The notes under the pieces were generated by a model. The model had not been told where the DNA came from, did not search any database, and saw nothing but the letters and a program-made list of their open reading frames with translations. Shown in pieces: positions 4,136 through 64,000 of a stretch of DNA of 64,000 nucleotides. The stretch is from Macrostomum lignano (Eukaryota), in assembly GCA_002269645.1 (NCBI GenBank), contig NIVC01000732.1, positions 124,001 to 188,000 on the forward strand, read 5' to 3'. The position numbers and the translations under genes are program-made. How positions within the stretch are numbered: position 1 is the first letter of the stretch; the number at the start of each line of letters is the position of its first letter.

Positions 4136-7100
4136 ATTGGCTAGATCACTACGGCACCGCCCTCCGAAAAGCCCAAGACCTGGCTACTTGGCAGACTCCG
4201 AACGGTCGCGAGAAGAAGAGGATGTCGGCTGTGCAGGCGCCAATGGCCAGTCCGACAGCCACTCGTCAGTAAGCGACGCTGAGTGCGGAGGTTTCGTGGA
4301 CACCTCCCCAAATAAAAAAATCCATGCGCGTGAGGCCGATCCATACGTCACAGGTCGAGTAGCGAGTCGTGAAGTCCCTTTCTTGCTAGACAGCGGCAGC
4401 CGGAAAAACTTTCTTGGTTCGTCAACCTGGGCCGTTATTAGACGTCGGATGCCTCATATTATATCGCGTGCTATTCCCGATTGTGTAACTACATTTGTAT
4501 GTACGATAGGACTCAGCTCCCTCTTGCTTGTAAGGTGACCATCCCGGTGGAGTTTGGTGATGTCGTCGCGGAAACCGAATTCCTCGTCACGGTTTCCGAT
4601 TGTGAAAACTTGCTTGGCGTATCGTTTATGCGAGAGCACTGCCAGAACTTGGACTTCGCTCAAGGAATGTTGAAGTTCAACAATGGCGCATGCATCCCTG
4701 TTCGCTATTCGCGTCGTGAGCTTCAGACTTGCCGAGTGTACACCTTCGAGAAGTGCACCCTGCCGCGTAGAAGTTCAGCGCTGCTTGCCGTCAGATTGGA
4801 TGACGGCCACCCTGAGAATCGAGGATCGCCATCAATTGTCGAGCTGGTTAAGTCGAGGCTGCATCCCAGCTGCAACGCTCTAGAAGCAGCGCCTGCTCTG
4901 ATGACGATGCCTGAAGGTCGCGGCTACACTGAGGTCGTCAACACCGCCGACAGCGAGGTGTTCTTGCAAGCCGGCATCCGTGTTGGTGTTGCGATGCCAC
5001 TCCGAACTGCCGACCTGATGTACCTGAGTGAGACGCCTGAACCCGAAGTGCGACATCTCCCAAAGAACTCTGAAGAGTCCAGTGCAGCATGGCTAGATGA
5101 AGTCGAGATCAACAGCGAACTGTCAAAAGAGCAACATCAGCGAGTGCGAGATCTCTTAGTCGAATGTCAAGCGGCCTTCTCCAAGCACCTGCTAGACGCC
5201 GGCCTGACACACCTAAGTCCTTGAGGAGTCCTTGCCGGCCTAAGTCCTTGAGACCACCGCCGAAGCAGACCTCCTTGACAACGCCCAAGACTACAGGTCT
5301 CGGAATCTGGAGACGCCCATGGACCAAGATTTAAAGGCCACCGCGCCAGCAGCCCTTCTGATGACGGCCCACAACGCAACTCCAGGACAGCAACTTAAGT
5401 ACAACCCTTCTGAGCCTTTCGTTGAGATCTCTCGCCATGTTGACAGGGGCCAGAATCTCGCGCCAGCTGCAAGGTCGAAGCTCTGTCCCCCGGGCCGACA
5501 GACAGCTGCTCATCGCCTGGTCGGAAAGTCGAATCCCCTTTGCGACACCGCCCAGTGCAGAAGACTCACCCAGTTTTGACGACGACTGAGCCGACGGCTA
5601 CGGCTGCCTGCGACTAGGCGTGCTTCACGTGTTGCGTCTCGCCCTACAGCCAAGAGTCGCCTGGGCTAGTTAGTGGAGGCATGCGCCCTGCTCCATCTGC
5701 GAAATTTTCTGTCAAGAGAGCGACGATGATCAACGGACGTACGCCGACGTTGTGAGACAAAGTCCCTCCGTGCCCACTGATTTTCTGAAGCTGCCGATGA
5801 CTCGCCTACAGTTCGTTGACGCCCAGCGCGCTGACCGAGCCATCAGCTATGTGCTTAACTTGGTCGAGAATGAAGCCCCAAAGCCGGAGTTCGACGCCCG
5901 GTTGCGACTGACGAAGGAGCAGCGGAACCTGCTCGGATACTACGAAAACCTGCAGGACAACGGCCTGCTGCTGATTAACCTGTCCGATGGCCAGCAGCCG
6001 CCAAAGGTTGTCCTGTCTGAGGCCCTTGACGCCCAGGTGCTCCAGGAGCTCCACAGTTCGCCACTGTGTGGACACCTCGGCGAGACGAAGACGTTACTGC
6101 GGCTACGAGAACGGTTCTGGAGACACGGATTAGCCCGTGCTACCAAGACCTTCATCAGTAAGTGCCGCACCTACCTTGAAAGTAAATCGCGACGGCGAGA
6201 GAGAGTTCCGGTCCAGAGTTTCCCAGTCTGCGAAGTTCTGGGTAGAATCCACTGTGATGTAGTAGGACCAATTGCGCAGAAGAGCAAGAGCGACAACCAC
6301 TACATCCTGACCTTGTGCAATGCGACGTCGAAGTGCCCATTCGCTTACCCGATGAGAAACCAGAAAGCCAAGACAGTCATCAAGCTTCTGCAGGAGCGCT
6401 TTATCCCTGAGTTCAGTGTACCATGCTGGATCCACCGACCAAGGCACCAACTTCACCAGATCAGCCTTTAAGAAGTTCTGCGACTTTTTTGACATCCGGC
6501 ATACAACACCATACAATCCAGCTTCTAACGGGCACACAAAATGAAATGCATTTCAGCGCAGAAATGCACTTGCACCAAAGCAATGGCACTGAGCGCTCCC
6601 CATCAGTGGAGAGCCATCACCGCCACACTCGCCATCAAGCTGACCTTGGCCCACCGATTGGAGTGGATGGAGGCCAGTTTGAATCAGGTGAATGCTGGGG
6701 GTGTCGCACATCCCTCCTTGGCTTAGGCTCAGCATCCGCTCACCCAACCAACCAGCCTTGCCACTGCTAGCAGAGTGGCGCCGGACTTCAAGACCACATA
6801 GACGGCAGCAACCAGGGCACAACCAGACTGCCAATGCCCAGGGATCCCCTCTTTCTTAGCCACAATTCTGCTGCTTGAACTCTCTTGCTTGAACTCCTAC
6901 ATCCCACCATATTTAGGCACTTTAAGCTTATGAGAGGGCTGGTGCCCCCTTCATTAATTTTTTTGGGCAATATTATGGCCTTTGCCTAGCCATGCGTTTT
7001 ACAGTCCATGGCGACTTTTCTCTTTCTTTAGCCTTTGTCCCATTCAGCTGACTTAGGCAACCCCTTTCTCCACGGGCTCTGCAAATATTTAAGTACCCCA

Positions 7101-25814: not shown

Positions 25815-26350
25815 AATTGCCTTAGTTGCCACCCTCCCAGATCCTCAGTTGCCAGCCTCCCCCAGATCCTCAGTTGCTAGGCGAGCCTCCCAGATCCTCA
25901 GTTGCTGGGCCAGCCTCCCAGATCCTTAGCTGGGCCAGCCTCCCAGATCCTCAGTAGCTGGGCCAGCCTCCCAGATCCTCTGTAGCTGTGCCAGCCTCCC
26001 AGATCCTCAGTAGCTGGGCCAGCCTCCCAGATCCTCAGTAGCTGGGCAGCCTCCCAGATCCTTAGCTGGGCCAGCCTCCCAGATCCTCAGTATCTGGGCC
26101 AGCCTCCCAGATCCTCAGTAGCTGGGCCAGTCTCCCAGATCCTCAGTATCTGGGCCAGCCTCCCAGATCCTCAGTAGCTGGGCCAGTCTCCCAGATCCTC
26201 AGTAGCTGGGCCAGCCTCCCAGATCCTCAGTATCTGGGCCAGCCTCCCAGATCCTCAGTAGCAGCCAGTAGCAGCCAGGCCAGCCTCCCAGATCCTCAGT
26301 TGCTGGGCCAGCCTCTCAGATCCTCAGTTGCTGGGCCAGCCTCTCAGATC
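25815..26350. repeat. 28-bp minisatellite (gctgggccagcctcccagatcctcagta), probably in the TBC1D10 3' UTR
   Basis: About 19 tandem units starting about 60 bp after the stop codon. Confidence 0.9.
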
Positions 26351-27664
26351 CCATATTTCGCAGTGCAATGAATCAAATCTCATGCTATGATTACAACTCT
26401 AAAATTATAGATCTGCTTATTATTACGTCACTGAATGGATAGAGCTTGGATTTATCTAGACTAGCCGCAGTTTTTTTAATTTATTATCATCAAAATATTT
26501 TTCTCTGTTTCGCAAATCAAAGCTACTTTCCATCTGCTGCTGCTTACTGGGGTCGTCGTTGCCTCTGGCTGGTTGCCCTGTGTTGAATTCAATCTTTTTC
26601 TACATTTTTCTGGTTGCCTATTCGCTGTATTTATCGCCTAAGCAGAGCTTGATTTTAATGATTAAGCAATGAAGATTATTATATTTTTAAAACTGCAATC
26701 TGGACCATTTAATACGTTGGTAATGCATTGCACCTTCAAAAGTATTAATTATATTATTATCTTGTTAATCAGCTTTTCCGTATTGCTTTTCAGTGCTTGT
26801 TGATTAGATTTAAAGCACTTTTGCCTTTGTGTACCTGTGTTTATGTGGGTATTTATGGGTCACACACCTGTGTTAATGCAGGTTTTCTTGTTTCACACAC
26901 CTGTGGTTATAGAGACAAATCTATTTTTTAATAGTTTTCTAGTGTGCAATCAAATATTGCGGAGTCTGCATAGTGCATGTGTATAATGGAGTTGCTGCTA
27001 GAGCCAGAATATTTTCACGTCTACACTTATTTATGAATTATAAGCAAATTATTTATAATAAAGCTGTTTATCTACCATGTACAATATTTACATCTAAGCA
27101 TATCGACGTTTTTTCTACTTACTAACCGGATTAGTAGTCATATATGCGTTCGATACTACTACTGGAAAAGATTAATCGCCTAATTTAGTGTGTTTTATTG
27201 ATTGTTATCTTGATTTTCTAAGAAACACTTTGGTTTACTCGTAGTGGGGCTTGGGGCCCATTCCTCTGGCCCCTAAGTTTCAGGGTGTATGAAACATTCT
27301 ATAATAATATTCTCTACTAACAGTAGGCTGTTGCGGACAGTTTGCCGTCTCGATCTCATTTTCAATCATGACCCCCTCGGGGCTACTGTTAATTGAATAG
27401 GGTCGTCCCCTTCAAAGATTTTTCTCCCTTAGCTCTCGATTCAAGTGTGACTTGCACCTGGGCCTTCTCACTTGTCTTGTAGTCAGAACAGCTTTTTAAT
27501 TAAACCCCCTGGGGCGCTGCATTGTTGGATTGAGCAGTATGCCTAATTAGAAGCGTATTTATATAATATCATAAGTCTTAGGGGTTGGTACATGTACTTT
27601 ATGATTTGTCTGAAAGTTAATTTAGAGCCTTGACTACCGCCTCCATCAGTGCCATTGAAAATCA

Positions 27665-39606: not shown

Positions 39607-40823
39607 CTACGACTCCATCGTCGCGGTGTCCTCGGCATCCTGAGGCGGGCTGTCTCCGCCCCCCACGATGGCTGCCAGCTCCTCGGCGAAGCCGGCGCCG
39701 AATCCAACGATGCAGCCGCCAGTGCGCCAGTGCGACCGCAGACCGCCGGCGTTCGAGTATTTTTTGCGGCACTTCGGACACTCAAACGGCTGCTCGGTGG
39801 TGTGCAGCCGCTTGTGCAGCTTGAGGTGCACGAACTGGGTGAACTTAGCTGAGCACAGCTTGCAGTTGAACGGCTTTTCGCCGCTGTGCAGCCGCATGTG
39901 GGTCTTCAGGTTGCTGGTGCTGCTGAACCGCTTGTGGCAGACGTAGCACGAGTGCGGCTTCTCGCCCGTGTGCACCAGGTTGTGCTTCTGCAGGTGCGCC
40001 AGCTGGGTGAAGCCTTTGTCGCACAGTTCGCAACGGAACGGCCGTTCGCCCGTGTGCGTCCGCAGGTGCACCTTCAGGTTGGACAGCTGGCCGAAACTCT
40101 TCAAACAGACGTGGCAGTCGTATTGCATCTTGCCGTCTTTCTTCTGCGGGGACGGATAAGGGGCCTGCTGAGGCTGCTGAGGCTGCTGATGCGACTGCTG
40201 AGCTGTTGAGTCGTCTGACAATGATGAAGACGATGGCGGATGCGCGCGCTTAGGCTGCTGAGGCGGCGGCTGCTGCTGCTGTTGCTGGAGGTGGCGGTGC
40301 TGGTGATGTTGAGATTGCAGAGGCGGCCGAGTGGCCTGCGGTCGGGCCACAGTCGGCAGAGTCGATGCCGCTCCAGCTGAAGCTTTGGGTGCGGCGGCTG
40401 CGGCTGCAGCGGCGGCGGTGGCGGCGGCGGCGGCAGCTAGGAACGGCGATGGCAGCTGGTTGAGCAGGCGGGAAGCTGTCGAGGTGCAGCCGGGGTACAG
40501 GTGAGAGCCCGGCAGTGGCGGTGGAAGGTTCAGCGACGATGGAGGAGGAGGCGGCGGCTGGGTGTGACGCAGCATCGAAGCTGCCGCGGCCGCTGCTGAG
40601 CTGAGAAACGGAGGTGGAAGCGGCGGCGGCGGAGGAGGAATTCGACTGCCCGGATGCCAGCCAATTGAAGCCAGGTTTTGCAGAATCTGCTGCTGATGAT
40701 GGTGCAGCAGGTTTTGCTGCTGCTGCTGCTGTTGCTGTTTTGGTGTCAGCTGAGTCAGGCGCTCAATGGAGAACGGCAAGGCGGCTGCAGGTGTTTTCCG
40801 TTTTGGACTGGGCGTTTCCAGCG
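39607..40823 (-). CDS. PRDM1: Blimp-1/PRDM1 exon 4: Q/P/A-rich region and five zinc fingers
   Basis: [23 protein letters not shown]...[11 protein letters not shown]...[11 protein letters not shown]...[11 protein letters not shown], plus a C2HC fifth finger, near-identical to Blimp-1 fingers. Acceptor ttttag. Confidence 0.96.
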
Positions 40824-40855: not shown

Positions 40856-41161
40856 TAATAATAATAATAATGATACTCAAAGTAATAATAATAATTGATT
40901 ACACCTGCCCCGATTGGGCCAGATGTGCAACCGGCAGCTCAGCCGCAGCTATTGCGTGGCGCATTTGAAGGCTGCGTACGGCTGTTCAGTCCAAGGACTG
41001 GGGGGTCGCCACACACAGCCTCAATTACCCCAGCTAATGCTGGCACCCATTTTACAGCTGGGTGAACTGAAGCAATGCAGAGTTAAGTGTCTTGCTCAAG
41101 GACACAAACTGTTCCAGTGGGATCGGCAGAAAAAAACCACTGACCACTAGGCTGCAGCCCC
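40856..41161 (-). mobile_element. tRNA-derived CORE-type SINE in Blimp-1 intron 3
   Basis: Minus-strand head ggggctgcagcctagtggtcag (A box) and a degenerate B box. Central 41046-41106 resembles the MIR CORE domain. (ATT)n tail. Confidence 0.7.
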
Positions 41162-54189: not shown

Positions 54190-54900
54190 TGTCTGACACA
54201 GTGCCGCTACCCCCTGACACCAAATCTGACACAGTGCCGCTACCCCCTGACACCAAATCTGACTCAGTGCCGCTACCCCCTGACACCAAATCTGACACAG
54301 TGCCGCTACCCCCCTGACACCAAATCTGACACAGTGCCGCTACCCCCCTGACACCAAATCTGACACAGTGCCGCTACCCCCCTGACACCAAATCTGACAC
54401 AGTGCCGCTACCCCCCTGACACCAAATCTGACACAGTGCCGCTACCCCTGACACCAAATCTGACGCAGTGCCGCTACCCCCCTGACACCAAATCTGACAC
54501 AGTGCCGCTACCCCCCTGACACCAAATCTGACACAGTGCCGCTACCCCCTGTCACTATCTGACACAGTGCCGCTACCCCCCTGACACCAAATCTGACACA
54601 GTGCCGCTACCCCTCTGACAGCGTCTGACACAAACGTTGGCCCCAACCATCTGACACAGACATGAGCCCCAACCATATGACACAGGCATTAGCCCAACCA
54701 TCTGACACAGCCATTGGCCCCACCATCTGACACCCATTGGCCCCACCATCTGACACAGCCATTGGCCCCACCATCTGACACCCATTGGCCCCACCATCTG
54801 ACACAGCCATTGGCCCCACCATCTGACACCCATTGGCCCCACCATCTGACACAGCCATTGGCCCAAAGATATCACACAGATGGGGCCACCATCTGACTGA
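54190..54900. repeat. compound minisatellite: about 33-bp unit followed by a 22-26-bp unit related to the 32880-34160 array (inverted)
   Basis: ctgacacagtgccgctaccccctgacaccaaat units, then ccatctgacacagccattggcccca units. Confidence 0.9.
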
Positions 54901-55389
54901 CCAAATATTTTCTTTGGATACAGAAACCCTAAGCCATTTTTTTAAGGTAACTCGCTTTGCTGTAAATGAAGATACGCTATAGTTTTTTATCGAAAAGCTA
55001 CATAATTTATTCTACAGGACAAATGACACTACTTCAAGTAGTTCGTATTCAATTCAGTATTTAGTGTTAAGAAAAGCTTCTGAAAAAATTGTCTATGGAT
55101 AAAGTTATCAACCGATTCAAGTCTAGTCTAGGCATTGTAGAATTTCAGCGATAGAAGGCGCACGGAAGCATCACTAATCTGTCTGAGAAACCAACAAAAT
55201 TAAAAAGAACATTCCAATAATTTTCGACAACGCACCAACCTGGAATCATGAGTCCAACTAGCGGTCCAGATGTCATTAATGGTTGGAAAATTGTCACAAC
55301 AGAAGAGACTGTTGTTGAGTCCTACTCTTTAGAGGTAGGGTATGATTAAATTATGATTCGTTTATTAATAGAATTCAGACAGAATTCCA

Positions 55390-55800
55390 GGATGTCAGGA
55401 TGTCAGAATGTCAAAATCTCAGAATGTCAGGATGTCAGAAGTTCCGGATGTCCGGATGTCCGGATGTTCGGATGTTCGGATGTTCGGATTTCCAGATGTC
55501 AGGATGTCAAAATGTCAGGATATCAGGATTTCAGAATGTCAGGATGTCAGGATGTCCGGATGTCAGAAGTTCCGGATGTCCGGATGTCCGGATGTCCGGA
55601 TGTTCGGATGTTTGGATGTCCAGATGTCAGGATGTCAAAATGTCAGGATATCAGGATTTCAGAATGTCAGGATGTCAGGATGTCAGGATGTCAGAAGTTC
55701 CGGATGTCCGGATGTCCGGATGTTCGGATGTTCGGATGTCTAGATGTCAGGATGTCAGGATGTCAGGATGTCAGGATGTCAGGATGTCAGGATGTCAGAG
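55390..55800. repeat. 8-bp repeat (gatgtcag/gatgtccg)
   Basis: Tandem units visible. Confidence 0.92.
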
Positions 55801-56023
55801 ACGTCATTTGGGGAGTGGTCGAAGGAAGCTCGAAGTTTCCTAGGCTCAATACTTCACAACTTTGAGTTAGTGTAATTTCGAGCTTGTGAAAGCGACACGG
55901 TTCGATTTGTGTTCGATTTTGTTGATAAAACAAAATATTTGAAGCTTCAACCCCCCCCCCTCGCCTCGCCGCAAACGCAATATGGTTGTATTTTTCGACA
56001 CCCCCCTGTCACTGCAGACGACA

Positions 56024-56592
56024 ATGACAGTCACCACAGAGTACAGCGACGGGACCAAAACTCAGAGTAAGACGTGCACAACAACAAAGAAAGACAGTTC
56101 AGTTGTCACCGGTCTCACCACAAAGCAGGTCCACTCAGTGTATGGCCAGGACATCAGCTGCATCTCCAAGCAGCTCAATCTTATGCTCAAAGACAACTCA
56201 TTGGCTGCCGATTACCTGCCAGTGGATGAGGTCAGCCTGTACACCGGCATGCTGGATGGCATCCTGCTCTGCGCCATGGTCAACCTGCTCCAGCCGGACA
56301 CCATCGACCTCAGCGCCGTGACCAGACGTTCCGACCTGAATAATTGTCCACCTGAGAATGCAGAGCAGCTGAAGATTCAGAATCGAAATTTAGGATTCTG
56401 TTTGTTAAAACCGTTGGGCGTGTCCATTGATAGCTTGAAAGTTCAAGAGATGCTGGAAAAGGGCTGTGTATTCGCTCTGACCAGCATACTTATTCAAGTG
56501 CTGCGATTAACTACGATTGGTAGAATGAATTTCAAGGAACACGAAGTGTTGGTGTACCTGTTCGATGGGTGGTCGAATCCCGAGGAAGCCAG
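56024..56592 (+). CDS. plastin/fimbrin-like protein, exon with CH1 (start codon uncertain; acceptor at 56017)
   Basis: HS...LN..L..D..LP....L...DGILLCAMVNLLQPDTID...NL aligns by eye to plastin ABD1; donor ag|gtgtga (phase 2). Confidence 0.8.
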
Positions 56593-56639
56593 GTGTGAAT
56601 TATTTACTTGGAGTTCAGTATCTTTTCGTGGTGGTTTCA

Positions 56640-57265
56640 AACTGTGTCTCAACCTGTCTCTCAATCTATGTCTCGATCTGCGTCTCAATCTGTCTCAGTC
56701 TGTCTCAATCTGTGTCTCAGTCTGTGTCTCAGTCTGTGTCTCAATCTGGGTCTCAGTCTGTGTCTCAGTCTGTGTCTCAGTCTGTGTCTCAATCTGTGTC
56801 TCAATCTGTCTCAGTCTGTCTCAATCTGTGTCTCAGTCTGTCTCAGTCTGTGTCTCAGTCTGTGTCTCAATCTGGGTCTCAGTCTGTGTCTCAACCTGTG
56901 TCTCAGTCTGTGTCTCAGTCTGTGTCTCAGTCTGTGTCTCAATCTGTGTCTCAGTCTGTCTCAATCTGTGTCTCGATCTGTGTCTCAATCTGTCTCAGTC
57001 TGTCTCAATCTGTGTCTCAATCTGTGTCTCAGTCTGTGTCTTAATCTGTGTCTCAGTCTGTGTCTCAATCTGTGTCTCAGTCTGTATCTCGATCTGTGTC
57101 TCAGTCTGTGTCTCAATCTGTGTCTTAATCTGTGTCTCGATCTGTGTCTCAGTCTGTGTCTTAATCTGTGTCTCGATCTGTGTCTCAGTCTCATTCTGTC
57201 TCAATCTGTGTCTCGATCTGTGTCTCAGTCTGTGTCTCAGTCCGTGTCTGAGTCTGTGTCTTAAT
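56640..57265. repeat. (tctgtgtctcag/aatc)n 12-bp-type repeat in the plastin-like intron
   Basis: Low-complexity tandem; extends the 449-aa ORF spuriously. Confidence 0.93.
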
Positions 57266-57276
57266 TCTTGTTTTTT

Positions 57277-57335
57277 ATTACCTGCCCTAATGGCCAAATG
57301 TCGAACCGACAGCTCAGCCGCAGCTATCTGAAGGC
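57277..57335 (-). mobile_element. 3' fragment of the same SINE family as 40856-41161
   Basis: acctgccctaatggccaaatgtcgaaccgacagctcagccgcagctat versus acctgccccgattgggccagatgtgcaaccggcagctcagccgcagctat. Confidence 0.65.
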
Positions 57336-57498
57336 TTCCACTAGTAGGCTACAACCCCTTTTCCGTGATGGATGATCTGTAAGCTTAAGCTCAGTGAGTA
57401 AGCAAAGTTCTTCTTGAAGTTCTCTTGCTAGCCAACTGGGAATGTTTCACAAAATCATAACAAATGGAGAGTTGAAATTTTTTTCGCATCATCCGCAG

Positions 57499-58081
57499 AG
57501 AGATTCTTGCCACCGGCCGTGAAGAGATGCTACTCCGCTGGGTGAACTACCAGATGAAACAGGCAGGAACCGATCTCGAGGTGAAAGAGGTCGGCAAGAG
57601 CTTAGCAGACTGCAGCATCTACGCCAACCTGCTCTGGGCAGTCTGTCCTATCGCCAAGCGGGGCGCCCTCATGCCCATTGGCGACGTCTTGAAGCCGGAC
57701 AGTTTCGTCACCCGGGCGGAACGCGTGATTTCTAACGCCAGCAAGTTGAACATCGCTGACGTAATCACGCCGCAGCACATCGCCCACGCTGGCGAAGAGA
57801 CGGACACGATAGCTGGTCTGCACCGAGTCTCTCTGAATGCCGCCTTTCTCTACAACATATTCTCCAGCTATCCCAATATTAAGGTGCCGAAAATGAAGAC
57901 ACCAACGCCGTCAACGGACGCCGATGCTGTAGTAGACGAATCGCTCAGAGAGCAGCTGAGATCCTGGTGCAAACGCGGCGCCTCCGAGGAGACTCTGATC
58001 CGCTGGCTGAACTCGTTCGGACCCTCGGATCCTGTGCAGTCGATTGAATCCGATCTGTGCAACGGCAGCGTCCTGCTCCAG
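57499..58081 (+). CDS. plastin-like exon (CH2 and start of CH3)
   Basis: EEMLLRWVNYQM...DCSIYANLL...RAE.VI.NA.KL...EETLIRWLNS; acceptor ccgcag, donor gtgaga. Confidence 0.85.
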
Positions 58082-58152
58082 GTGAGAACCGATCGATTAG
58101 CTAATCGATCAATCAAGGGATTTTTATCAATTAACTTACTGCTTTAATCCAG

Positions 58153-58530
58153 GTGTGGGAAGCCATGATCCCCGGCTCAGTCGCGTGGTCCAAGGTAAAT
58201 CTCAAAGTCTACAGCTCGACGGTAGTGCAGAATACCAAGCGCAAATTCCAATGGATGTGCAACTGCGAAGAGGTGCTCAACTGCGCCATCAAGGCGGGCA
58301 TCCCCAGGAACTGCTGCAGCCCGGCCGAACTAGCGAGCGGCCACGCAAAGAACACCATGTCGCTGGTGTTTCAAATGATGCGCCTGCACGCGCAGCTGTC
58401 GCGCAAGTGCACAATCAGCGGAGTCGGCAGAGGAAAAAAAGTAGCCGACCTCGACGACGCCGAACTGGTGAAATGGTTTAACACCAAGATTTCTGCTTTT
58501 GGTTCCGATTTTCAACTGACGAATCTAGGA
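58153..58530 (+). CDS. plastin-like exon (rest of CH3, start of CH4)
   Basis: V.WSKVN...NC...L...SLVFQMMR...DAELVKWFN; acceptor tccag, donor gtgagt. Confidence 0.85.
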
Positions 58531-58704
58531 GTGAGTGAAAACTTTCAGTGACTTTGTTAATCAAAGTTTTTAGCGGAGTAGTAAAGCGTCCGACTCTCCC
58601 GCCAAAGGCTCCTGAGTTTGATTCTATGCACGTATCATTGGGCTCGTGCATCAAATAAAATAGTCAGCTTTAGGCACCAAGGTGGCTCCAAAGCATAATC
58701 AAAC

Positions 58705-59035
58705 CTCCAAGGGGATGATCTAATCTGCATGGGGATGATCCAACCTCCATGGGGGATGATCCTACCTCCATGGGGGATGATCCAACCTCCATGGGGGATG
58801 ATCCAACCTCCATGGGGGATGATCCAACCTCCAAGGGATAATCTAATCTGCAAGGGGATGATCCAACCTCCATGAAGATAATCCAATCTCTATGGAGATG
58901 ATCCAACCTCCTCCATGGGGATAATACAACCTCTATGGGAATGATCTACTCTCCATGGAGATGATCCAACCTCTATGGGCATGATCTAATCTCCATGGAG
59001 ATGAGCCAACCTCCACGGGAATGATCCAACCTTCA
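58705..59035. repeat. 21-bp minisatellite (atccaacctccatgggggatg)
   Basis: Tandem units visible. Confidence 0.88.
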
Positions 59036-59194
59036 AGGCGTAGACCAAACCCCTATTTAAACTGCTGCCTTGATTTGACGGTTAGGGGGCTCCCAAATCC
59101 GTCAAGTAGTCCGTCACTAAGTACGCTCGTAGTTTTAGCTTGATTCTTATCGAATTATCTCTGAATCAAAGAAGTAAAATAAACACGCACACAG

Positions 59195-60211
59195 GATTTG
59201 CGACTGAAGAACACCAACGTTATTGGATATTTTGGCGAGAGACTTCTCGTAGAGATTGGTCTATGCTTCCGATTCACTGAGCACTCTCATCAGAAGCAGA
59301 GTGGAGAAACTCCAGCACTGCCACCGCCGTCTCCGCTGCCGGCACTACCGGCGCCACCGCCGCCGCCGCCGCCGCCTCCACCGCCTCCTCCACCGCCACC
59401 GCCGTCACCACCACCTCAGTCTCCGCCGCCGCCACCACCGCCACCACCACCGCCACCTCCGCAGGAAACCCAGCTAGTTTTGAAGCCACCGCAGCAGGTG
59501 GTGCCACAAAAGACTCCGACGCCACCGCCGCCGCCGACGCCGCCGCCGCCACCTCCACAGTCTCCAAAGAATTCGCCGCAACAGAAACCTTCGTTGCCAG
59601 GGGCTGGTAGCAAAGCGTCTGAACAGCCGAAACTTTTGAAAGACAGCGGCTCAGGAACTAGCAAATCGTCTAACCAAATGAGCACCCTTGCCGTACCGCA
59701 GAAGCAACCGCAAAACTCAGGCGGAAAAGGCAATTCGTCGAGTGGAAAGACGGCCGGCAATTCGTCGAGCGGGAAGACGTCCGGCAATTCGACGAGCGGG
59801 AAACCTTCCGGCAACCGATCGTATACCAGCTTCACCAGTACGTCTTCAAAATCGTCGAAGAGCTACAGCAAAACGACATCATCTTCTAGCTACTCCAAGT
59901 GGTCGTATGGCAACCGGAACGCAGCTGATGAAGATCAGGAAAATGCGATTGAGGAGGCTGAAACTCAGGGGACGCCCGATCTGCAGGATCTCGAGAGTGC
60001 TAACAACGATCCCAACGACGGCGACTGGATATTCGAGAAGGTGTCGCCTGTTTCCGGCGAAGCGTTGACGCAGTTCTCTGTCGCCGCGATTCTGATGTTC
60101 AACAAGGCTGGCATCGTTGTGTACGCCAGTCACCTGGGTCCTGACACCGATTCTGCTGTGTACCGCAGCATTCTGATGGAGCTCAACGCGCTGTCCTTGA
60201 AGAAGGCCTAA
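59195..60211 (+). CDS. probable last exon of the plastin-like gene: polyproline, Ser/Gly/Lys-rich and short C-terminal domain
   Basis: Acceptor cacag|GAT is in phase 0 with the previous exon; 338-codon open frame with mixed Pro codons; AATAAA at about 60387. The join to the CH exons is inferred. Confidence 0.65.
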   Translation, partial: DLRLKNTNVIGYFGERLLVEIGLCFRFTEHSHQKQSGETPALPPPSPLPALPAPPPPPPPPPPPPPPPPPSPPPQSPPPPPPPPPPPPPQETQLVLKPPQQVVPQKTPTPPPPPTPPPPPPQSPKNSPQQKPSLPGAGSKASEQPKLLKDSGSGTSKSSNQMSTLAVPQKQPQNSGGKGNSSSGKTAGNSSSGKTSGNSTSGKPSGNRSYTSFTSTSSKSSKSYSKTTSSSSYSKWSYGNRNAADEDQENAIEEAETQGTPDLQDLESANNDPNDGDWIFEKVSPVSGEALTQFSVAAILMFNKAGIVVYASHLGPDTDSAVYRSILMELNALSLKKA

Positions 60212-60521
60212 AAAGGCTTTTGATTGATTTTGAAATTTATTTATACGCTGGCGTTGTCTTCTGTTTTCTCAGTTTGGCTTGAAGTAACTGCGACCAAAAG
60301 CATTAAACAGCTATACATGTAGAAAAAGTGCAAAACACCTTCATTAAAAGTGCCCAATCCGAAACGCCAACCAAACCAAAGCTTATTAATAAAACTTCAA
60401 TGCCGTAATGAAGTGCAAGTCTATTCTAGCATCGATTATCACAAATTTTGTTTGTTTTTGCATTTCGAATTTTCTATTGTGCTTCGATGAAGGATTCCTA
60501 CTGAAAGTGTGAAACTAGTGA

Positions 60522-62154
<1,633 letters not shown>

Positions 62155-62370: not shown

Positions 62371-63165
62371 ATGGCCAAATCAGAGCAAGCCAGTTTATTG
62401 CCTCCAAAGTTCAGCGGCGACTCCAACGTGAGAATGTGGCTAAGCACGTGTGAGGACTTCGCCGACGACTGCGAATGGGACGACAAGAAGAAGGCAAAGA
62501 AGCTGAGACTGCTGGTGACAGGAGAAGCGCAAATCTTCGTCTGGGAGCAGCCGGCAGACGTGTCAGCCAGCTATGAAAGGCTGAAGGAGAAGCTGATCGA
62601 GTGCTTCGGCAACAGTCTGAGCTGCTACAGAGCAATGGAGGAGTTTGAAGAGCGAAAGCGACAGTCCAACGAGTCGCTGAGGGAGCTCGCCTACAGCCTG
62701 AAGCTTCTCCACCTTCGGGCCCGCCCGGACGACTCCGTGGCGGCTCGGGAAAAGGACGTGAAGTTTCGCCTGATGCGCCTCCTGCCATCTGCCGTGAGAG
62801 ATGCGCTGTTGAAGGACCAGGACGCGGACTCGTGTTCGCTGGCCGCCATCGTCGACAGAGCTGCGCAGCTTGAGCTGGTGAGCCACGCAACTACAGCCTC
62901 ATCAGCCGCGGTGTCGGTAGAAGACAGACGGCTGAGCCAGCTGGAGCAGCAGGTGCAGCAGCTGACAGCCAGCGTGCGAACGGGACCACCCGGAAGAGAC
63001 AGGCGTCAGAAGGGACCCATTAAGTGCTTCAGCTGCGGCGAGCCGGGTCACATTGCTAGGCGGTGCCCAAAGACGATCGGCAGCCGCTGCAGCCGGTGCT
63101 CAGGCAAGGGTCACTCCGCCGCGGTGTGCCCGACACCAACTGGTCAGCCGCAGGGAAACTTCTGA
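62371..63165 (+). CDS. gag: Gag with two CCHC zinc knuckles, 264 aa
   Basis: PPKFSG..W..., CFSCGEPGHIARRC and CSRCSGKGHSAAVC. Confidence 0.93.
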   Translation: MAKSEQASLLPPKFSGDSNVRMWLSTCEDFADDCEWDDKKKAKKLRLLVTGEAQIFVWEQPADVSASYERLKEKLIECFGNSLSCYRAMEEFEERKRQSNESLRELAYSLKLLHLRARPDDSVAAREKDVKFRLMRLLPSAVRDALLKDQDADSCSLAAIVDRAAQLELVSHATTASSAAVSVEDRRLSQLEQQVQQLTASVRTGPPGRDRRQKGPIKCFSCGEPGHIARRCPKTIGSRCSRCSGKGHSAAVCPTPTGQPQGNF

Positions 63166-64000
63166 GGGTCGGCAGCCTGGGGCCAGCACCGACCCGCTCA
63201 AAAGGGGCCCTCAGATCAGCGCCTTCAGTCTTCGTGAAGGTGCACTTTGGCAGCGTGTCAGCGCCTGCTCTGCTCGACACCGGCGCGCAAGTTTCGTTGA
63301 TGGACAAGTCACTGTTCGACAGATTGCTGTGCAAGATCGACTCCACCGACATCGGTGCGCTGCCGACGGCTGTCGACGGATCCCGGCTGCGCTGCCTTGG
63401 CCTGTCAGCAGCGGATGTTTCGATCGGCCAGACCATCCGCGTGCGCCATCGCTTCACAGTCGTGGACGGCATCCAGCCCAGCCTGATCATCGGCATGGAC
63501 TTCATTGGCGAGGTGTCGCAGGCGATGACCATTGACATTAAAGAAGGCGTCGTCAGGTTCGACGGCACAGCTGTGCCTTTTAGCAGCGAGCCGGCTCGAG
63601 CAGACTGTCGCCTGGTGCCGAGTGTCCTGGTGGCGCGTGTGGCGGCAACTACGGAGCTGTTCGCCCGCAGCGAGAAGCTGGTGTGGCTCAAGGTGGATTC
63701 CAGCGGCGAGCAGGGAGTCTTTGAGCCGTCTGAGGACTTCGTGAAGTCCACTGCCGTCCTGCCGGCCCGCGTGCTGGCGGTCTCGGACGACTGCCGCATC
63801 CCGGTGAAAATGTGCAACCTGGCAGAGGAGCCCGTGCTGCTGTACGCCAACAAGGCGGTCGGCACGTTCGAAGGCGCGATGACAGACGGGGACGGTCGCC
63901 AGGAGGCGGCCCAGGAGAACCCCGTCGGTTGGAACATCAACGCGGAGCTGCCCGAACCGGATGCTGCGAGGCTGCGACAGCTGCTGGAGAGCAACGAGGA
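63153..64000 (+). CDS. pol: Pol (protease onward) in the -1 frame, entered via the GGGAAAC slippery site; partial
   Basis: Open frame GKLLRVG...ALLDTGAQVSLM...LIIGMDF...LRQLLES to the window end. Absent from the ORF track because there is no stop within the window. Confidence 0.9.

What the first reader, a model, noticed from the sequence alone, without database searches (positions are those of the whole stretch)
56018..60211. Unusual plastin/fimbrin derivative: CH1-CH2-CH3, truncated CH4, then formin/WASP-like polyproline tracts
Seen: three exons encode recognisable plastin CH domains, but homology stops about 30 residues into CH4. The next in-phase exon encodes long Pro runs (up to 14 consecutive), a Ser/Gly/Lys-rich stretch and an acidic segment. 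No EF-hand exon was recognised upstream. Established: canonical plastins are EF-EF-CH1-CH2-CH3-CH4 bundlers with no proline-rich domain, and long polyproline tracts bind profilin, SH3 and EVH1 domains in actin-assembly factors. Inference: a possibly lineage-specific protein coupling F-actin binding to profilin-actin recruitment, apparently without the Ca2+-sensing headpiece.
Basis: partly seen in the sequence, partly recalled or inferred. Interest (0 to 1): 0.7.

Follow-up and report, generated by a model that had tools for sequence, protein, structure and literature searches.

The report
EF-hand-less flatworm plastin with split CH4
This is a real five-exon gene for a very divergent flatworm (Macrostomum-type) relative of the actin-bundling protein plastin that has no calcium-sensing head, and whose fourth actin-binding module is most likely not cut short but interrupted by a 250-residue floppy loop that in this species has expanded into long proline runs.

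Summary
A five-exon GT-AG gene (55248-60211, + strand, 879 aa) encodes a plastin/fimbrin-like core. The proline runs are 17 and 13 residues, not 14.

No EF-hand coding potential exists anywhere in the window, and the relatives also lack EF-hands.

The only relatives found are Macrostomum lignano 'CH domain-containing' hypothetical proteins (about 47% identity), which sit in a tandem array. They show that the proline-rich stretch lies inside one conserved last exon. It is flanked by two conserved blocks: LKNTNxxGYFGERxLVE, and a 63-residue C-terminus that is the best-conserved part of the protein (65% identity).

That C-terminus aligns, in order and with the right spacing, to helices D-G of plastin CH4. 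Directed tests give P about 0.002-0.03. An AlphaFold model of the loop-trimmed ABD2 has pLDDT about 78-89 there and matches whole fimbrin/plastin ABD2 structures.

So CH4 is probably split by a disordered loop, not truncated. The loop is about 55, 115 and 251 residues in different paralogues. Long polyproline occurs only here, on a CCG-type repeat. Profilin or SH3 recruitment is possible but neither conserved nor tested.

Verdict: a new variant of a known kind, of moderate interest.

The parts
55248..55334 (+). Exon 1: start codon and residues 1-29, carrying the N-terminal motif xINGxxxT shared with M. lignano relatives. There is no EF-hand.
   Evidence: GT donor at 55335 and phase 0 into exon 2. 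An in-frame TAA lies 9 codons upstream of the ATG. The motif aligns with the P0001 N-terminus; P0007 shows the same FING motif in its sequence.
56018..56592 (+). Exon 2: Thr/Ser-rich N-terminal stretch plus CH1 (residues 30-221), including the fimbrin hallmark DGILLCxxVNLLQPDTID.
   Evidence: Pfam CH hit of 25 bits on residues about 102-176. phmmer alignment to fimbrin 1pxy/1rt8 starts at residue 78-81. tblastn of P0001 gives 42% identity.
57499..58081 (+). Exon 3: CH2, the inter-ABD linker and the start of CH3 (residues 221-415).
   Evidence: Pfam CH hit of 28 bits. 49-52% identity to M. lignano P0001/P0002. AG acceptor and GTGAG donor.
58153..58530 (+). Exon 4: the rest of CH3, plus helix A of CH4 (DLDDAELVKWFNTKISAFG) (residues 416-541).
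   Evidence: Pfam CH hit of 52 bits on residues 383-494. A plastin-CH4 HMM hits residues 513-551 at 12.3 bits.
59195..59266 (+). Exon 5, first part: CH4 helices B-C (DLRLKNTNVIGYFGERLLVEIGLC, residues 542-565).
   Evidence: The exon starts at the same codon as the last exon of three M. lignano paralogues, and this block is 63-68% identical to them. hhalign carries the alignment through this block onto plastin CH4. pLDDT is 88-96 in the model.
59267..60019 (+). Exon 5, middle: a 251-residue low-complexity insertion (residues 566-816) in the loop between CH4 helices C and D. It has three blocks: Pro-rich 59303-59575 (62% Pro, runs of 17 and 13); Ser/Gly/Lys/Thr-rich 59576-59905 (net +13); acidic 59906-60019 (net -11).
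   Evidence: Composition. Only this frame is open. TRF finds a period-3 CCG-type array at 59348-59462 and a 27-nt repeat (3.2 copies) at 59729-59814. The equivalent loop is about 55 residues in M. lignano copies 1/2 and about 115 in P0001, with no long polyPro.
60020..60211 (+). Exon 5, end: conserved 63-residue C-terminal module (GDWIFEKV...FSVAAILMFNKAGIVVYASHLGPDTDSAVYRSILMELNALSLKKA) plus the TAA stop. It is interpreted as CH4 helices D-G.
   Evidence: 65% identity to P0001, the highest of any region. The best hhalign hit of this module on a full-length plastin profile falls in CH4, on KYAISMARKIGAPVYAL. MAFFT places it on plastin CH4 helices E-G, at 25% identity compared with 27% for CH3. 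Shuffle tests give P = 0.02 and 0.002. pLDDT is 78-89.
60388..60393 (+). AATAAA, a candidate polyadenylation signal 177 nt after the stop codon.
   Evidence: Pattern search. This is consensus only, not evidence of use.

Best explanation
The locus encodes a member of a Macrostomum-lineage family of plastin/fimbrin-derived proteins. Members keep the four-CH-domain actin cross-linking core (ABD1 = CH1-CH2, ABD2 = CH3-CH4) but have no EF-hand headpiece.

In this family CH4 is interrupted, between helices C and D, by an intrinsically disordered loop with a basic/Pro-rich first half and an acidic second half. The conserved C-terminal 63 residues fold back to complete CH4. The loop varies greatly in length between paralogues. 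In this gene it has grown to 251 residues, largely by expansion of CCG-type codon repeats into polyproline runs of 17 and 13, and of a 27-nt Ser/Gly/Lys repeat.

Inferred mechanism: a calcium-independent F-actin cross-linker. CH4 is the type-2, regulatory-type CH domain of ABD2, and I infer that it tolerates a long surface loop. The loop probably acts as a spacer or regulatory/interaction region. Here its polyproline could additionally dock profilin, SH3 or WW proteins.

Shown: the gene model, the homology, the absence of EF-hands, the collinearity and the loop variability. Inferred: the completion of CH4, actin binding, and any partner binding.
For: - **Gene model:** five in-phase GT-AG exons.
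- **Homology to the fimbrin/plastin core:** 1pxy 8e-30, 1rt8, 7r94; CH Pfam hits.
- **Relatives:** full-length collinear M. lignano relative P0001 (693 aa, 99% coverage of the loop-deleted query) and paralogues, none with EF-hand Pfam hits. They form a tandem array at the M. lignano locus.
- **Last exon:** it starts at the same codon in all copies and holds both conserved blocks with a variable loop between them.
- **No EF-hand** in six frames of the window, and no other CH4-like exon in the window.
- **C-terminal module matches the CH4 C-half:**
  - hhalign best hit lies in CH4 of a full-length plastin profile (7 of 150 shuffles reach the score).
  - Anchored hhalign gives Prob 90.7%, E 1.3e-6, and extends to ...NKAGIVVYAS / RKIGAPVYAL. 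No local score among 120 C-half shuffles reaches the real one, and 3 of 120 global scores do.
  - Two MAFFT runs give the same register.
  - Identity to plastins is 24.9% for the C-half against 26.8% for CH3.
  - Directed BLOSUM62 shuffle tests give 98/5000 and 9/5000.
- **Structure:** the AF2 model of loop-trimmed ABD2 has mean pLDDT 81, with 78-89 over most of the C-terminal module and helices where E and G are expected. Foldseek aligns 261-279 of 275 columns to fimbrin/plastin ABD2 structures, and 140-143 columns to the isolated 124-residue plastin CH4.
- **Conservation:** the C-terminal module is the most conserved region (65%).
- **Repeat origin of the polyPro tract:**
Against: - Generic searches do not recognise the C-terminal module as CH. 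Pfam CH gives no hit on the module or on loop-deleted CH4, phmmer against PDB finds none, and a plastin-CH4 HMM scores it at -0.8 bits.
- AF2 with only the four family rows and the native loop left CH4 below pLDDT 50.
- The confident model used plastin rows already aligned to the module, so it is biased towards the CH fold.
- Foldseek TM-scores are moderate (0.5-0.65, rmsd 4.5-7 Å).
- The statistical support is P of about 0.002-0.05, not overwhelming, and the register was first seen by eye.
- No transcript evidence is available for this organism. Actin binding has not been tested for any member of the family.
Confidence: 0.6

Rival explanations
1. CH4 really is truncated after about 50 residues. 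The Pro-rich region is a functional FH1/WASP-like profilin- or SH3-recruiting tail. The conserved C-terminal 63 residues are a separate, new small domain unrelated to CH4.
For: Pfam and PDB sequence searches stop at residue about 545-551 and do not recognise the C-terminus. Family-only AF2 did not place it. Runs of 17 and 13 prolines are long enough, by established knowledge, to bind profilin. The Pro codons are a mixture (34 CCG, 21 CCA, 8 CCT, 2 CCC in the loop) with few non-Pro interruptions, so the tract is not a young pure repeat.
Against: The N-terminal third of a CH domain cannot fold alone, yet it is conserved in every paralogue together with the C-terminal module. The module aligns collinearly to CH4 helices D-G with the right spacing, and at the same identity level as CH3. 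The model and Foldseek agree. Long polyPro is absent from all M. lignano paralogues. No FH2, WH2 or VCA domain is present.
Confidence: 0.2
2. The architecture is as in the best explanation, but the polyproline and Ser/Gly/Lys tracts are functionally neutral. They would be replication-slippage expansions tolerated in a surface loop of a repeat-prone genome, with no partner binding of biological importance.
For: TRF detects period-3 (CCG-type) and 27-nt arrays exactly under these tracts. Every intron and flank of the gene is filled with mini- or microsatellites. Loop length and sequence are not conserved among paralogues.
Against: Within residues 592-631 the codons are 17 CCG, 12 CCA and 5 CCT, against 6 non-Pro codons. 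That is more synonymous than non-synonymous variation, a weak hint that proline identity is maintained. The basic-then-acidic polarity of the loop is shared with M. lignano.
Confidence: 0.15
3. Annotation artefact or pseudogene. The exons do not form one functional mRNA; for example, the last exon may belong to another transcript, or the gene may be decaying.
For: There is no transcript evidence. M. lignano models P0002-P0005 end exactly at the exon 4/5 boundary. Read-through of the 58530 donor stops after 6 codons, and an AATAAA lies at 58654.
Against: All five exons are open and in phase with canonical splice sites. The exon 4/5 join reproduces the contiguous sequence of the independent M. 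lignano protein P0001, and the same intron position is seen in three paralogues. The C-terminus is 65% conserved. Only the coding frame is open across the 753-nt loop.
Confidence: 0.05

Closest known systems
Macrostomum lignano 'Calponin-homology (CH) domain-containing' hypothetical proteins (e.g. BOX15_Mlig006537g3, P0001; paralogues P0002-P0007)
   Same: The domain order is the same from the N-terminal xING motif to the C-terminal FSVxAILMFxKAGxxVYASxLGPxTDxxVYRSxLMELNxLS block. There is no EF-hand. The last-exon boundary is the same, and a disordered loop sits at the same point of CH4. Identity is about 47% overall and 65% in the C-terminal module.
   Different: Their loop is about 55 or 115 residues, is Pro/Ala/Lys-rich then acidic, and has no run longer than PPP. 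Here it is 251 residues with P17 and P13 runs and a Ser/Gly/Lys repeat block. They sit in a tandem array; only one copy lies in this window. None has been studied (no papers found).
Canonical plastins/fimbrins (PLS1-3, Sac6/Fim1, AtFIM1; structures 1pxy, 1rt8, 7r94)
   Same: These are the best sequence and fold matches. They share the four tandem CH domains in the same order and hallmark motifs such as DGxxLCxxxNxxxPDTID (CH1) and RxWxNSxG...DLxNGxxLLQ (CH3).
   Different: There is no EF-hand headpiece, which is present in the vast majority of fimbrins/plastins (PMC10533516). Identity is only 22-27%. CH4 is interrupted by a long disordered loop. There is a short Thr/Ser-rich N-terminus instead of the headpiece. 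Trematode and cestode plastins in the library keep EF-hands and an intact CH4.
Calcium-insensitive fimbrins (yeast, plant, Tetrahymena)
   Same: They set a precedent for fimbrin cores that bundle actin without Ca2+ control (PMC10533516, citing Shirayama & Numata 2003). That is the behaviour predicted here.
   Different: Those studied by NMR in that paper (yeast and plant) keep a non-binding EF-hand headpiece; here no headpiece is present at all. None is known to me to have a split CH4.
FH1 domains of formins / proline-rich regions of WASP and Ena/VASP
   Same: Long uninterrupted polyproline tracts inside a disordered region of an actin-associated protein. Such tracts bind profilin and SH3 domains (established knowledge).
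   Different: There is no FH2, WH2/VCA or EVH1/EVH2 domain. The tract lies inside a CH domain loop and is not conserved in the nearest relatives.

Membership tests
Plastin/fimbrin | Closest relatives by sequence are fimbrins/plastins rather than other tandem-CH proteins | tested here: met
   phmmer against PDB gives 1pxy 8e-30, 1rt8 1.5e-28 and 7r94 1e-23, but alpha-actinin only 0.07. The exhaustive HMMER search returns plastins after the Macrostomum family.
Plastin/fimbrin | CH1, CH2 and CH3 present in order | tested here: met
   Pfam PF00307 hits of 25, 28 and 52 bits on the three segments, giving 91.7 bits for the whole protein. A collinear alignment to the fimbrin cores covers residues 78-545.
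Plastin/fimbrin | Complete CH4 forming ABD2 with CH3 | tested here: inconclusive
   The N-half is recognised. The C-half is supported by anchored hhalign (Prob 90.7%), shuffle tests with P about 0.002-0.03, MAFFT register, an AF2 model with pLDDT 78-89, and Foldseek full-ABD2 alignments. It is not recognised by Pfam or phmmer or by family-only AF2.
Plastin/fimbrin | N-terminal EF-hand headpiece (Ca2+ regulation) | tested here: not met
   No EF-hand Pfam hit on the protein. A plastin-headpiece HMM against six frames of all 64 kb gives best E = 2.8. An in-frame stop lies upstream of the ATG. The relatives carry only PF00307.
Plastin/fimbrin | Binds and bundles F-actin | not testable with these tools
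   This needs co-sedimentation and bundling assays.
Formin FH1 / WASP-type proline-rich actin-assembly factor | Polyproline tracts long enough for profilin/SH3 binding | tested here: met
   Runs of 17, 13, 6 and 5 prolines.
Formin FH1 / WASP-type proline-rich actin-assembly factor | Adjacent catalytic/assembly module (FH2, WH2/VCA, EVH2) | tested here: not met
   Only CH-type Pfam families are reported at E <= 10.
Formin FH1 / WASP-type proline-rich actin-assembly factor | Proline tracts conserved among relatives | tested here: not met
   The loops of M. lignano P0001, P0006 and copies 1-3 of L001 have at most PPP.
Formin FH1 / WASP-type proline-rich actin-assembly factor | Binds profilin-actin | not testable with these tools
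   This needs pull-down or polymerisation assays.
Macrostomum EF-less split-CH4 plastin-like family (undescribed) | Collinear similarity over the full length, including the N-terminal xING motif and the C-terminal module | tested here: met
   P0001 covers 99% of the loop-deleted query at E = 3.5e-158.
Macrostomum EF-less split-CH4 plastin-like family (undescribed) | Last exon begins at D-x-x-LK[NS]TN and holds helices B-C, a variable loop and the C-terminal module in one ORF | tested here: met
   Window 59195-60211 compared with three copies in L001.

The most novel reading that the evidence does not exclude
A plastin-derived actin cross-linker has acquired, inside a loop of its fourth CH domain, an FH1-like polyproline module that recruits profilin-actin (or SH3/WW partners) directly to bundles. 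One polypeptide would then couple filament cross-linking with monomer delivery or signalling, without calcium control. This would be a domain combination not described for any CH-domain protein.
Probability: 0.2. Interest if true: 0.65.

Novelty: new variant of a known kind. Interest (0 to 1): 0.4.

Why it matters
Plastins are among the most conserved actin bundlers, and their headpiece and four compact CH domains are nearly invariant. A lineage that has removed the Ca2+ switch and tolerates loops of 55 to 251 residues within CH4 offers three things:

- It is a natural experiment on how much a type-2 CH domain can be interrupted.
- It is a caution for domain annotation. A 'truncated' CH4 here is most likely a split one that Pfam cannot see.
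- It is a possible example of a new interaction module (polyproline) arising from codon-repeat expansion inside a folded domain.

M. lignano is a laboratory model with RNAi and transgenesis, so the family is directly testable.

Tried and rejected
- **Generic searches on loop-deleted CH4 and on the C-terminal module alone.** Pfam CH and phmmer against PDB gave no hits, so the split-CH4 idea cannot rest on them.
- **Profile search with alignment A1 in the search for homologous proteins.** It returned fewer proteins than the single sequence and no plastins, so that search was wasted.
- **The exhaustive representative search.** It used a profile that included one canonical plastin, so plastins fill the top 150 and weak family members could be hidden below them.
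- **AF2 on the native ABD2 with only four family rows.** CH3 was moderately confident, CH4 and the C-terminus were below pLDDT 50. This was inconclusive.
- **Search for another exon that could complete CH4.** A plastin-CH4 HMM against six frames of the window found only weak hits at 46-47 kb (- strand), which are translations of a tandem repeat (SFTNPKLHK...) and not a gene.
- **Search for an internal intron that would remove the loop.** No GTRAG or GTRRG donor lies inside exon 5. One genuine intron of this gene uses GTGTG, so this is not exhaustive.
- **Rfam and tRNA scans of the window.** Nothing found.
- **Look-up of the genomic locus of P0002.** Not on record.
- **Literature.** No paper on this family was found.

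Full report
**What is in the sequence**

Reading 54-64 kb and translating the candidate exons gives a five-exon gene on the + strand with canonical GT-AG borders. All exons are in phase:

| Exon | Window coordinates | Content |
|---|---|---|
| 1 | 55248-55334 | ATG, residues 1-29 |
| 2 | 56018-56592 | N-terminal stretch and CH1 |
| 3 | 57499-58081 | CH2, linker, start of CH3 |
| 4 | 58153-58530 | rest of CH3, CH4 helix A |
| 5 | 59195-60211 | rest of the protein, TAA stop |

The product is 879 residues. Exon 1 was missed. It has an in-frame stop 9 codons upstream of the ATG, and its VINGWKIVTTEETVVES motif aligns with the N-terminus of the relative P0001.

Pfam finds CH domains for CH1 (25 bits, just under the cut-off), CH2 (28 bits) and CH3 (52 bits). 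The best solved relatives are the fimbrin cores 1pxy (8e-30) and 1rt8 and plastin-3 7r94. Their alignments end at residue 542-545.

The low-complexity part holds Pro runs of 17, 13, 6 and 5 residues, a Ser/Gly/Lys/Thr block (net +13) and an acidic block (net -11).

**Relatives**

I searched with the low-complexity stretch removed. This found a 693-residue Macrostomum lignano hypothetical protein (P0001, BOX15_Mlig006537g3) covering 99% of the query at E = 3.5e-158. It also found several paralogous or fragmentary M. lignano models and one canonical plastin.

An exhaustive HMMER search of 1.84 billion representatives returned M. lignano proteins followed by plastin-like hits. The nine hits I read were canonical plastins or multi-ABD proteins, including trematode and cestode plastins with EF-hands and an intact CH4.

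The M. lignano locus carries at least three tandem copies. P0001 and P0002 are 48% identical to each other and 47% identical to this protein. This gene is therefore a further paralogue group of the same family.

The window shares non-coding repeats at 83-90% identity with the M. lignano locus. It therefore comes from Macrostomum or a very close relative. Its protein is not in the collection searched.

**The proline-rich stretch belongs to the protein**

In all three M. lignano copies the last exon starts at the same codon as here:

- M. lignano: ...ag|D-P-x-L-K-[NS]-T-N-A-L-G-Y-F-G-E-R
- This window: cag|D-L-R-L-K-N-T-N-V-I-G-Y-F-G-E-R

In each copy it runs in one ORF through a variable loop to a conserved C-terminus. 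The junction 58530/59195 reproduces the contiguous P0001 sequence.

Only the coding frame is open across the 753-nt loop. No GTRAG or GTRRG donor lies inside exon 5. No other CH4-like exon exists in the window.

RNA evidence is still missing.

**CH4 is probably split, not truncated**

The last 63 residues (GDWIFEKVSPVSGEALTQFSVAAILMFNKAGIVVYASHLGPDTDSAVYRSILMELNALSLKKA) are not low-complexity. They are the best-conserved region against M. lignano, at 65% compared with 42-49% for CH1-CH3.

They line up with plastin CH4 from the G-x-I/W-x-Y/F turn after helix C to the end. The match KAGxxVYA / KIGAxVYA is clear and the spacing to the last helix is nearly identical.

Evidence for this reading:

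1. Against a full-length 679-column plastin profile, the single best hhalign hit of the module falls in CH4, on KYAISMARKIGAPVYAL (score 19.5; 7 of 150 column shuffles reach it).
2. I joined the family's CH4 N-half and C-half and compared them with a plastin CH4 profile. hhalign gives Prob 90.7% and E 1.3e-6, and the alignment extends through helix E. With the C-half shuffled, no local score of 120 and 3 global scores of 120 reach the real values.
3. MAFFT, run locally and by the alignment tool with 44 plastins, gives the same register. In it the C-half is 24.9% identical to plastins, against 26.8% for CH3 and 18.5% for the accepted CH4 N-half.
4. Directed BLOSUM62 local scores against the plastin consensus C-half are reached by 98 of 5000 shuffles (this protein) and 9 of 5000 (P0001).
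5. An AF2 model of ABD2 with the loop trimmed to 17 residues and plastin rows in the alignment has mean pLDDT 81 and pTM 0.76. Values are 88-96 for CH4 helices A-C and 78-89 over most of the C-terminal module. Helices are predicted where E and G are expected.
6. Foldseek aligns 261-279 columns of the 275-residue model to fimbrin/plastin ABD2 structures (1pxy, 7r94_F, 1rt8, 3byh_B, 6vec). It aligns 140-143 columns to the isolated 124-residue plastin CH4 structures 1wjo and 2d85.

Evidence against:

- Pfam, phmmer and a plastin-CH4 HMM do not detect the C-half.
- AF2 with only four family rows and the native loop was uninformative for CH4.
- The confident model is biased by the aligned plastin rows.
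- Foldseek TM-scores are moderate.

I put the split-CH4 reading at about 0.75.

**The loop**

Its position is the C-D loop of CH4. Its length is about 55 residues in M. lignano copies 1 and 2, about 115 in P0001, and 251 here.

A basic/Pro-rich first part and an acidic second part are shared. Long polyproline is found only here.

The Pro tracts lie on a period-3 CCG-type array (59348-59462) and the Ser/Gly/Lys block lies on a 27-nt repeat. The gene's introns 1, 2 and 4 and its flanks are packed with mini- and microsatellites. Codon-repeat expansion in a tolerant loop is therefore the simplest origin.

The Pro codons are mixed: 17 CCG, 12 CCA and 5 CCT among residues 592-631, with 6 non-Pro codons. 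This is a weak hint that proline is being maintained rather than decaying.

**No calcium switch**

No EF-hand appears in the protein, in any frame of the 64-kb window (best E = 2.8), or in the relatives.

**Mechanism**

Most likely this is a Ca2+-independent F-actin cross-linker with two tandem-CH actin-binding domains. This is inferred from homology and from conserved CH1 and CH3 hallmark motifs.

In tandem-CH actin-binding domains the second, type-2 CH domain is mainly regulatory (established knowledge). I infer that it can carry a long surface loop. The loop may set spacing, may regulate ABD2 through its basic and acidic halves, or may dock partners.

In this species the P17 and P13 tracts could bind profilin or SH3/WW proteins. 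That step is plausible. It is not conserved in relatives and has not been tested.

**Comparison and verdict**

This is not a canonical plastin, because the headpiece was tested and is absent. It is not a formin/WASP-type factor, because it has no assembly domain and no conserved Pro tracts. It belongs to an undescribed Macrostomum family of plastin-core derivatives.

I rate it a new variant of a known kind. Interest is moderate at 0.4. The architecture is unusual and testable in a laboratory model. The most striking part of the original claim (a truncated CH4 fused to an FH1-like tail) is largely explained by a variable loop insertion and repeat expansion.

Noticed in passing
window 54192-54864, 55388-55806, 56637-57265, 58698-59032, 60522-62154: The gene is embedded in tandem repeats. 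Introns 1, 2 and 4 each consist largely of one minisatellite: an 8-mer (51 copies), a 12-mer (53 copies) and a 20-mer (16.5 copies). Two more arrays (34-mer and 25-mer units) lie just upstream. An (AGAT)408 microsatellite of 1.6 kb lies 300 nt after the stop codon.
   Followed up: partly
window 62371-64000 (+): Retroelement: a Gag-like ORF with a CCHC zinc knuckle, followed by further open reading frame to the end of the window, which I did not scan against Pfam. It lies immediately downstream of the gene.
   Followed up: partly
window 40870-41145 and 25822-26352; L001 6104-6365, 8833-9092, 14704-15124: Non-coding repeats are shared with the M. lignano plastin-like locus. A roughly 260-nt element matches at 88-90% identity and is present twice, inverted, within the M. 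lignano gene. A tandem repeat matches at 82-85%. This suggests the window comes from Macrostomum or a close relative.
   Followed up: partly
window 58531-58659: Reading through the exon-4 donor ends after 6 codons (GVSENFQ*), and an AATAAA lies at 58654. M. lignano models P0002-P0005 end exactly at this exon boundary. A short isoform lacking the loop and the CH4 C-half is conceivable.
   Followed up: no
L001 1-10532 (M. lignano NIVC01001909.1): At least three tandem copies of the plastin-like gene lie head to tail. The first is cut by the locus start, the second is called as 640 aa, and the third is P0001 (693 aa). Their CH4 loop lengths differ.
   Followed up: partly
window 39607-40779 (-), 5752-6471 (+): Other coding potential in the window: a C2H2 zinc-finger ORF with several fingers, and an ORF with an integrase H2C2 zinc-binding domain that is probably a transposable element.
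   Followed up: no
proteins P0130, P0131 (Clonorchis, Spirometra plastin-3): Parasitic flatworm plastins keep EF-hands and an intact CH4 but carry C-terminal low-complexity tails of about 250-300 residues after CH4. This is a different solution for adding a disordered region to a plastin.
   Followed up: no
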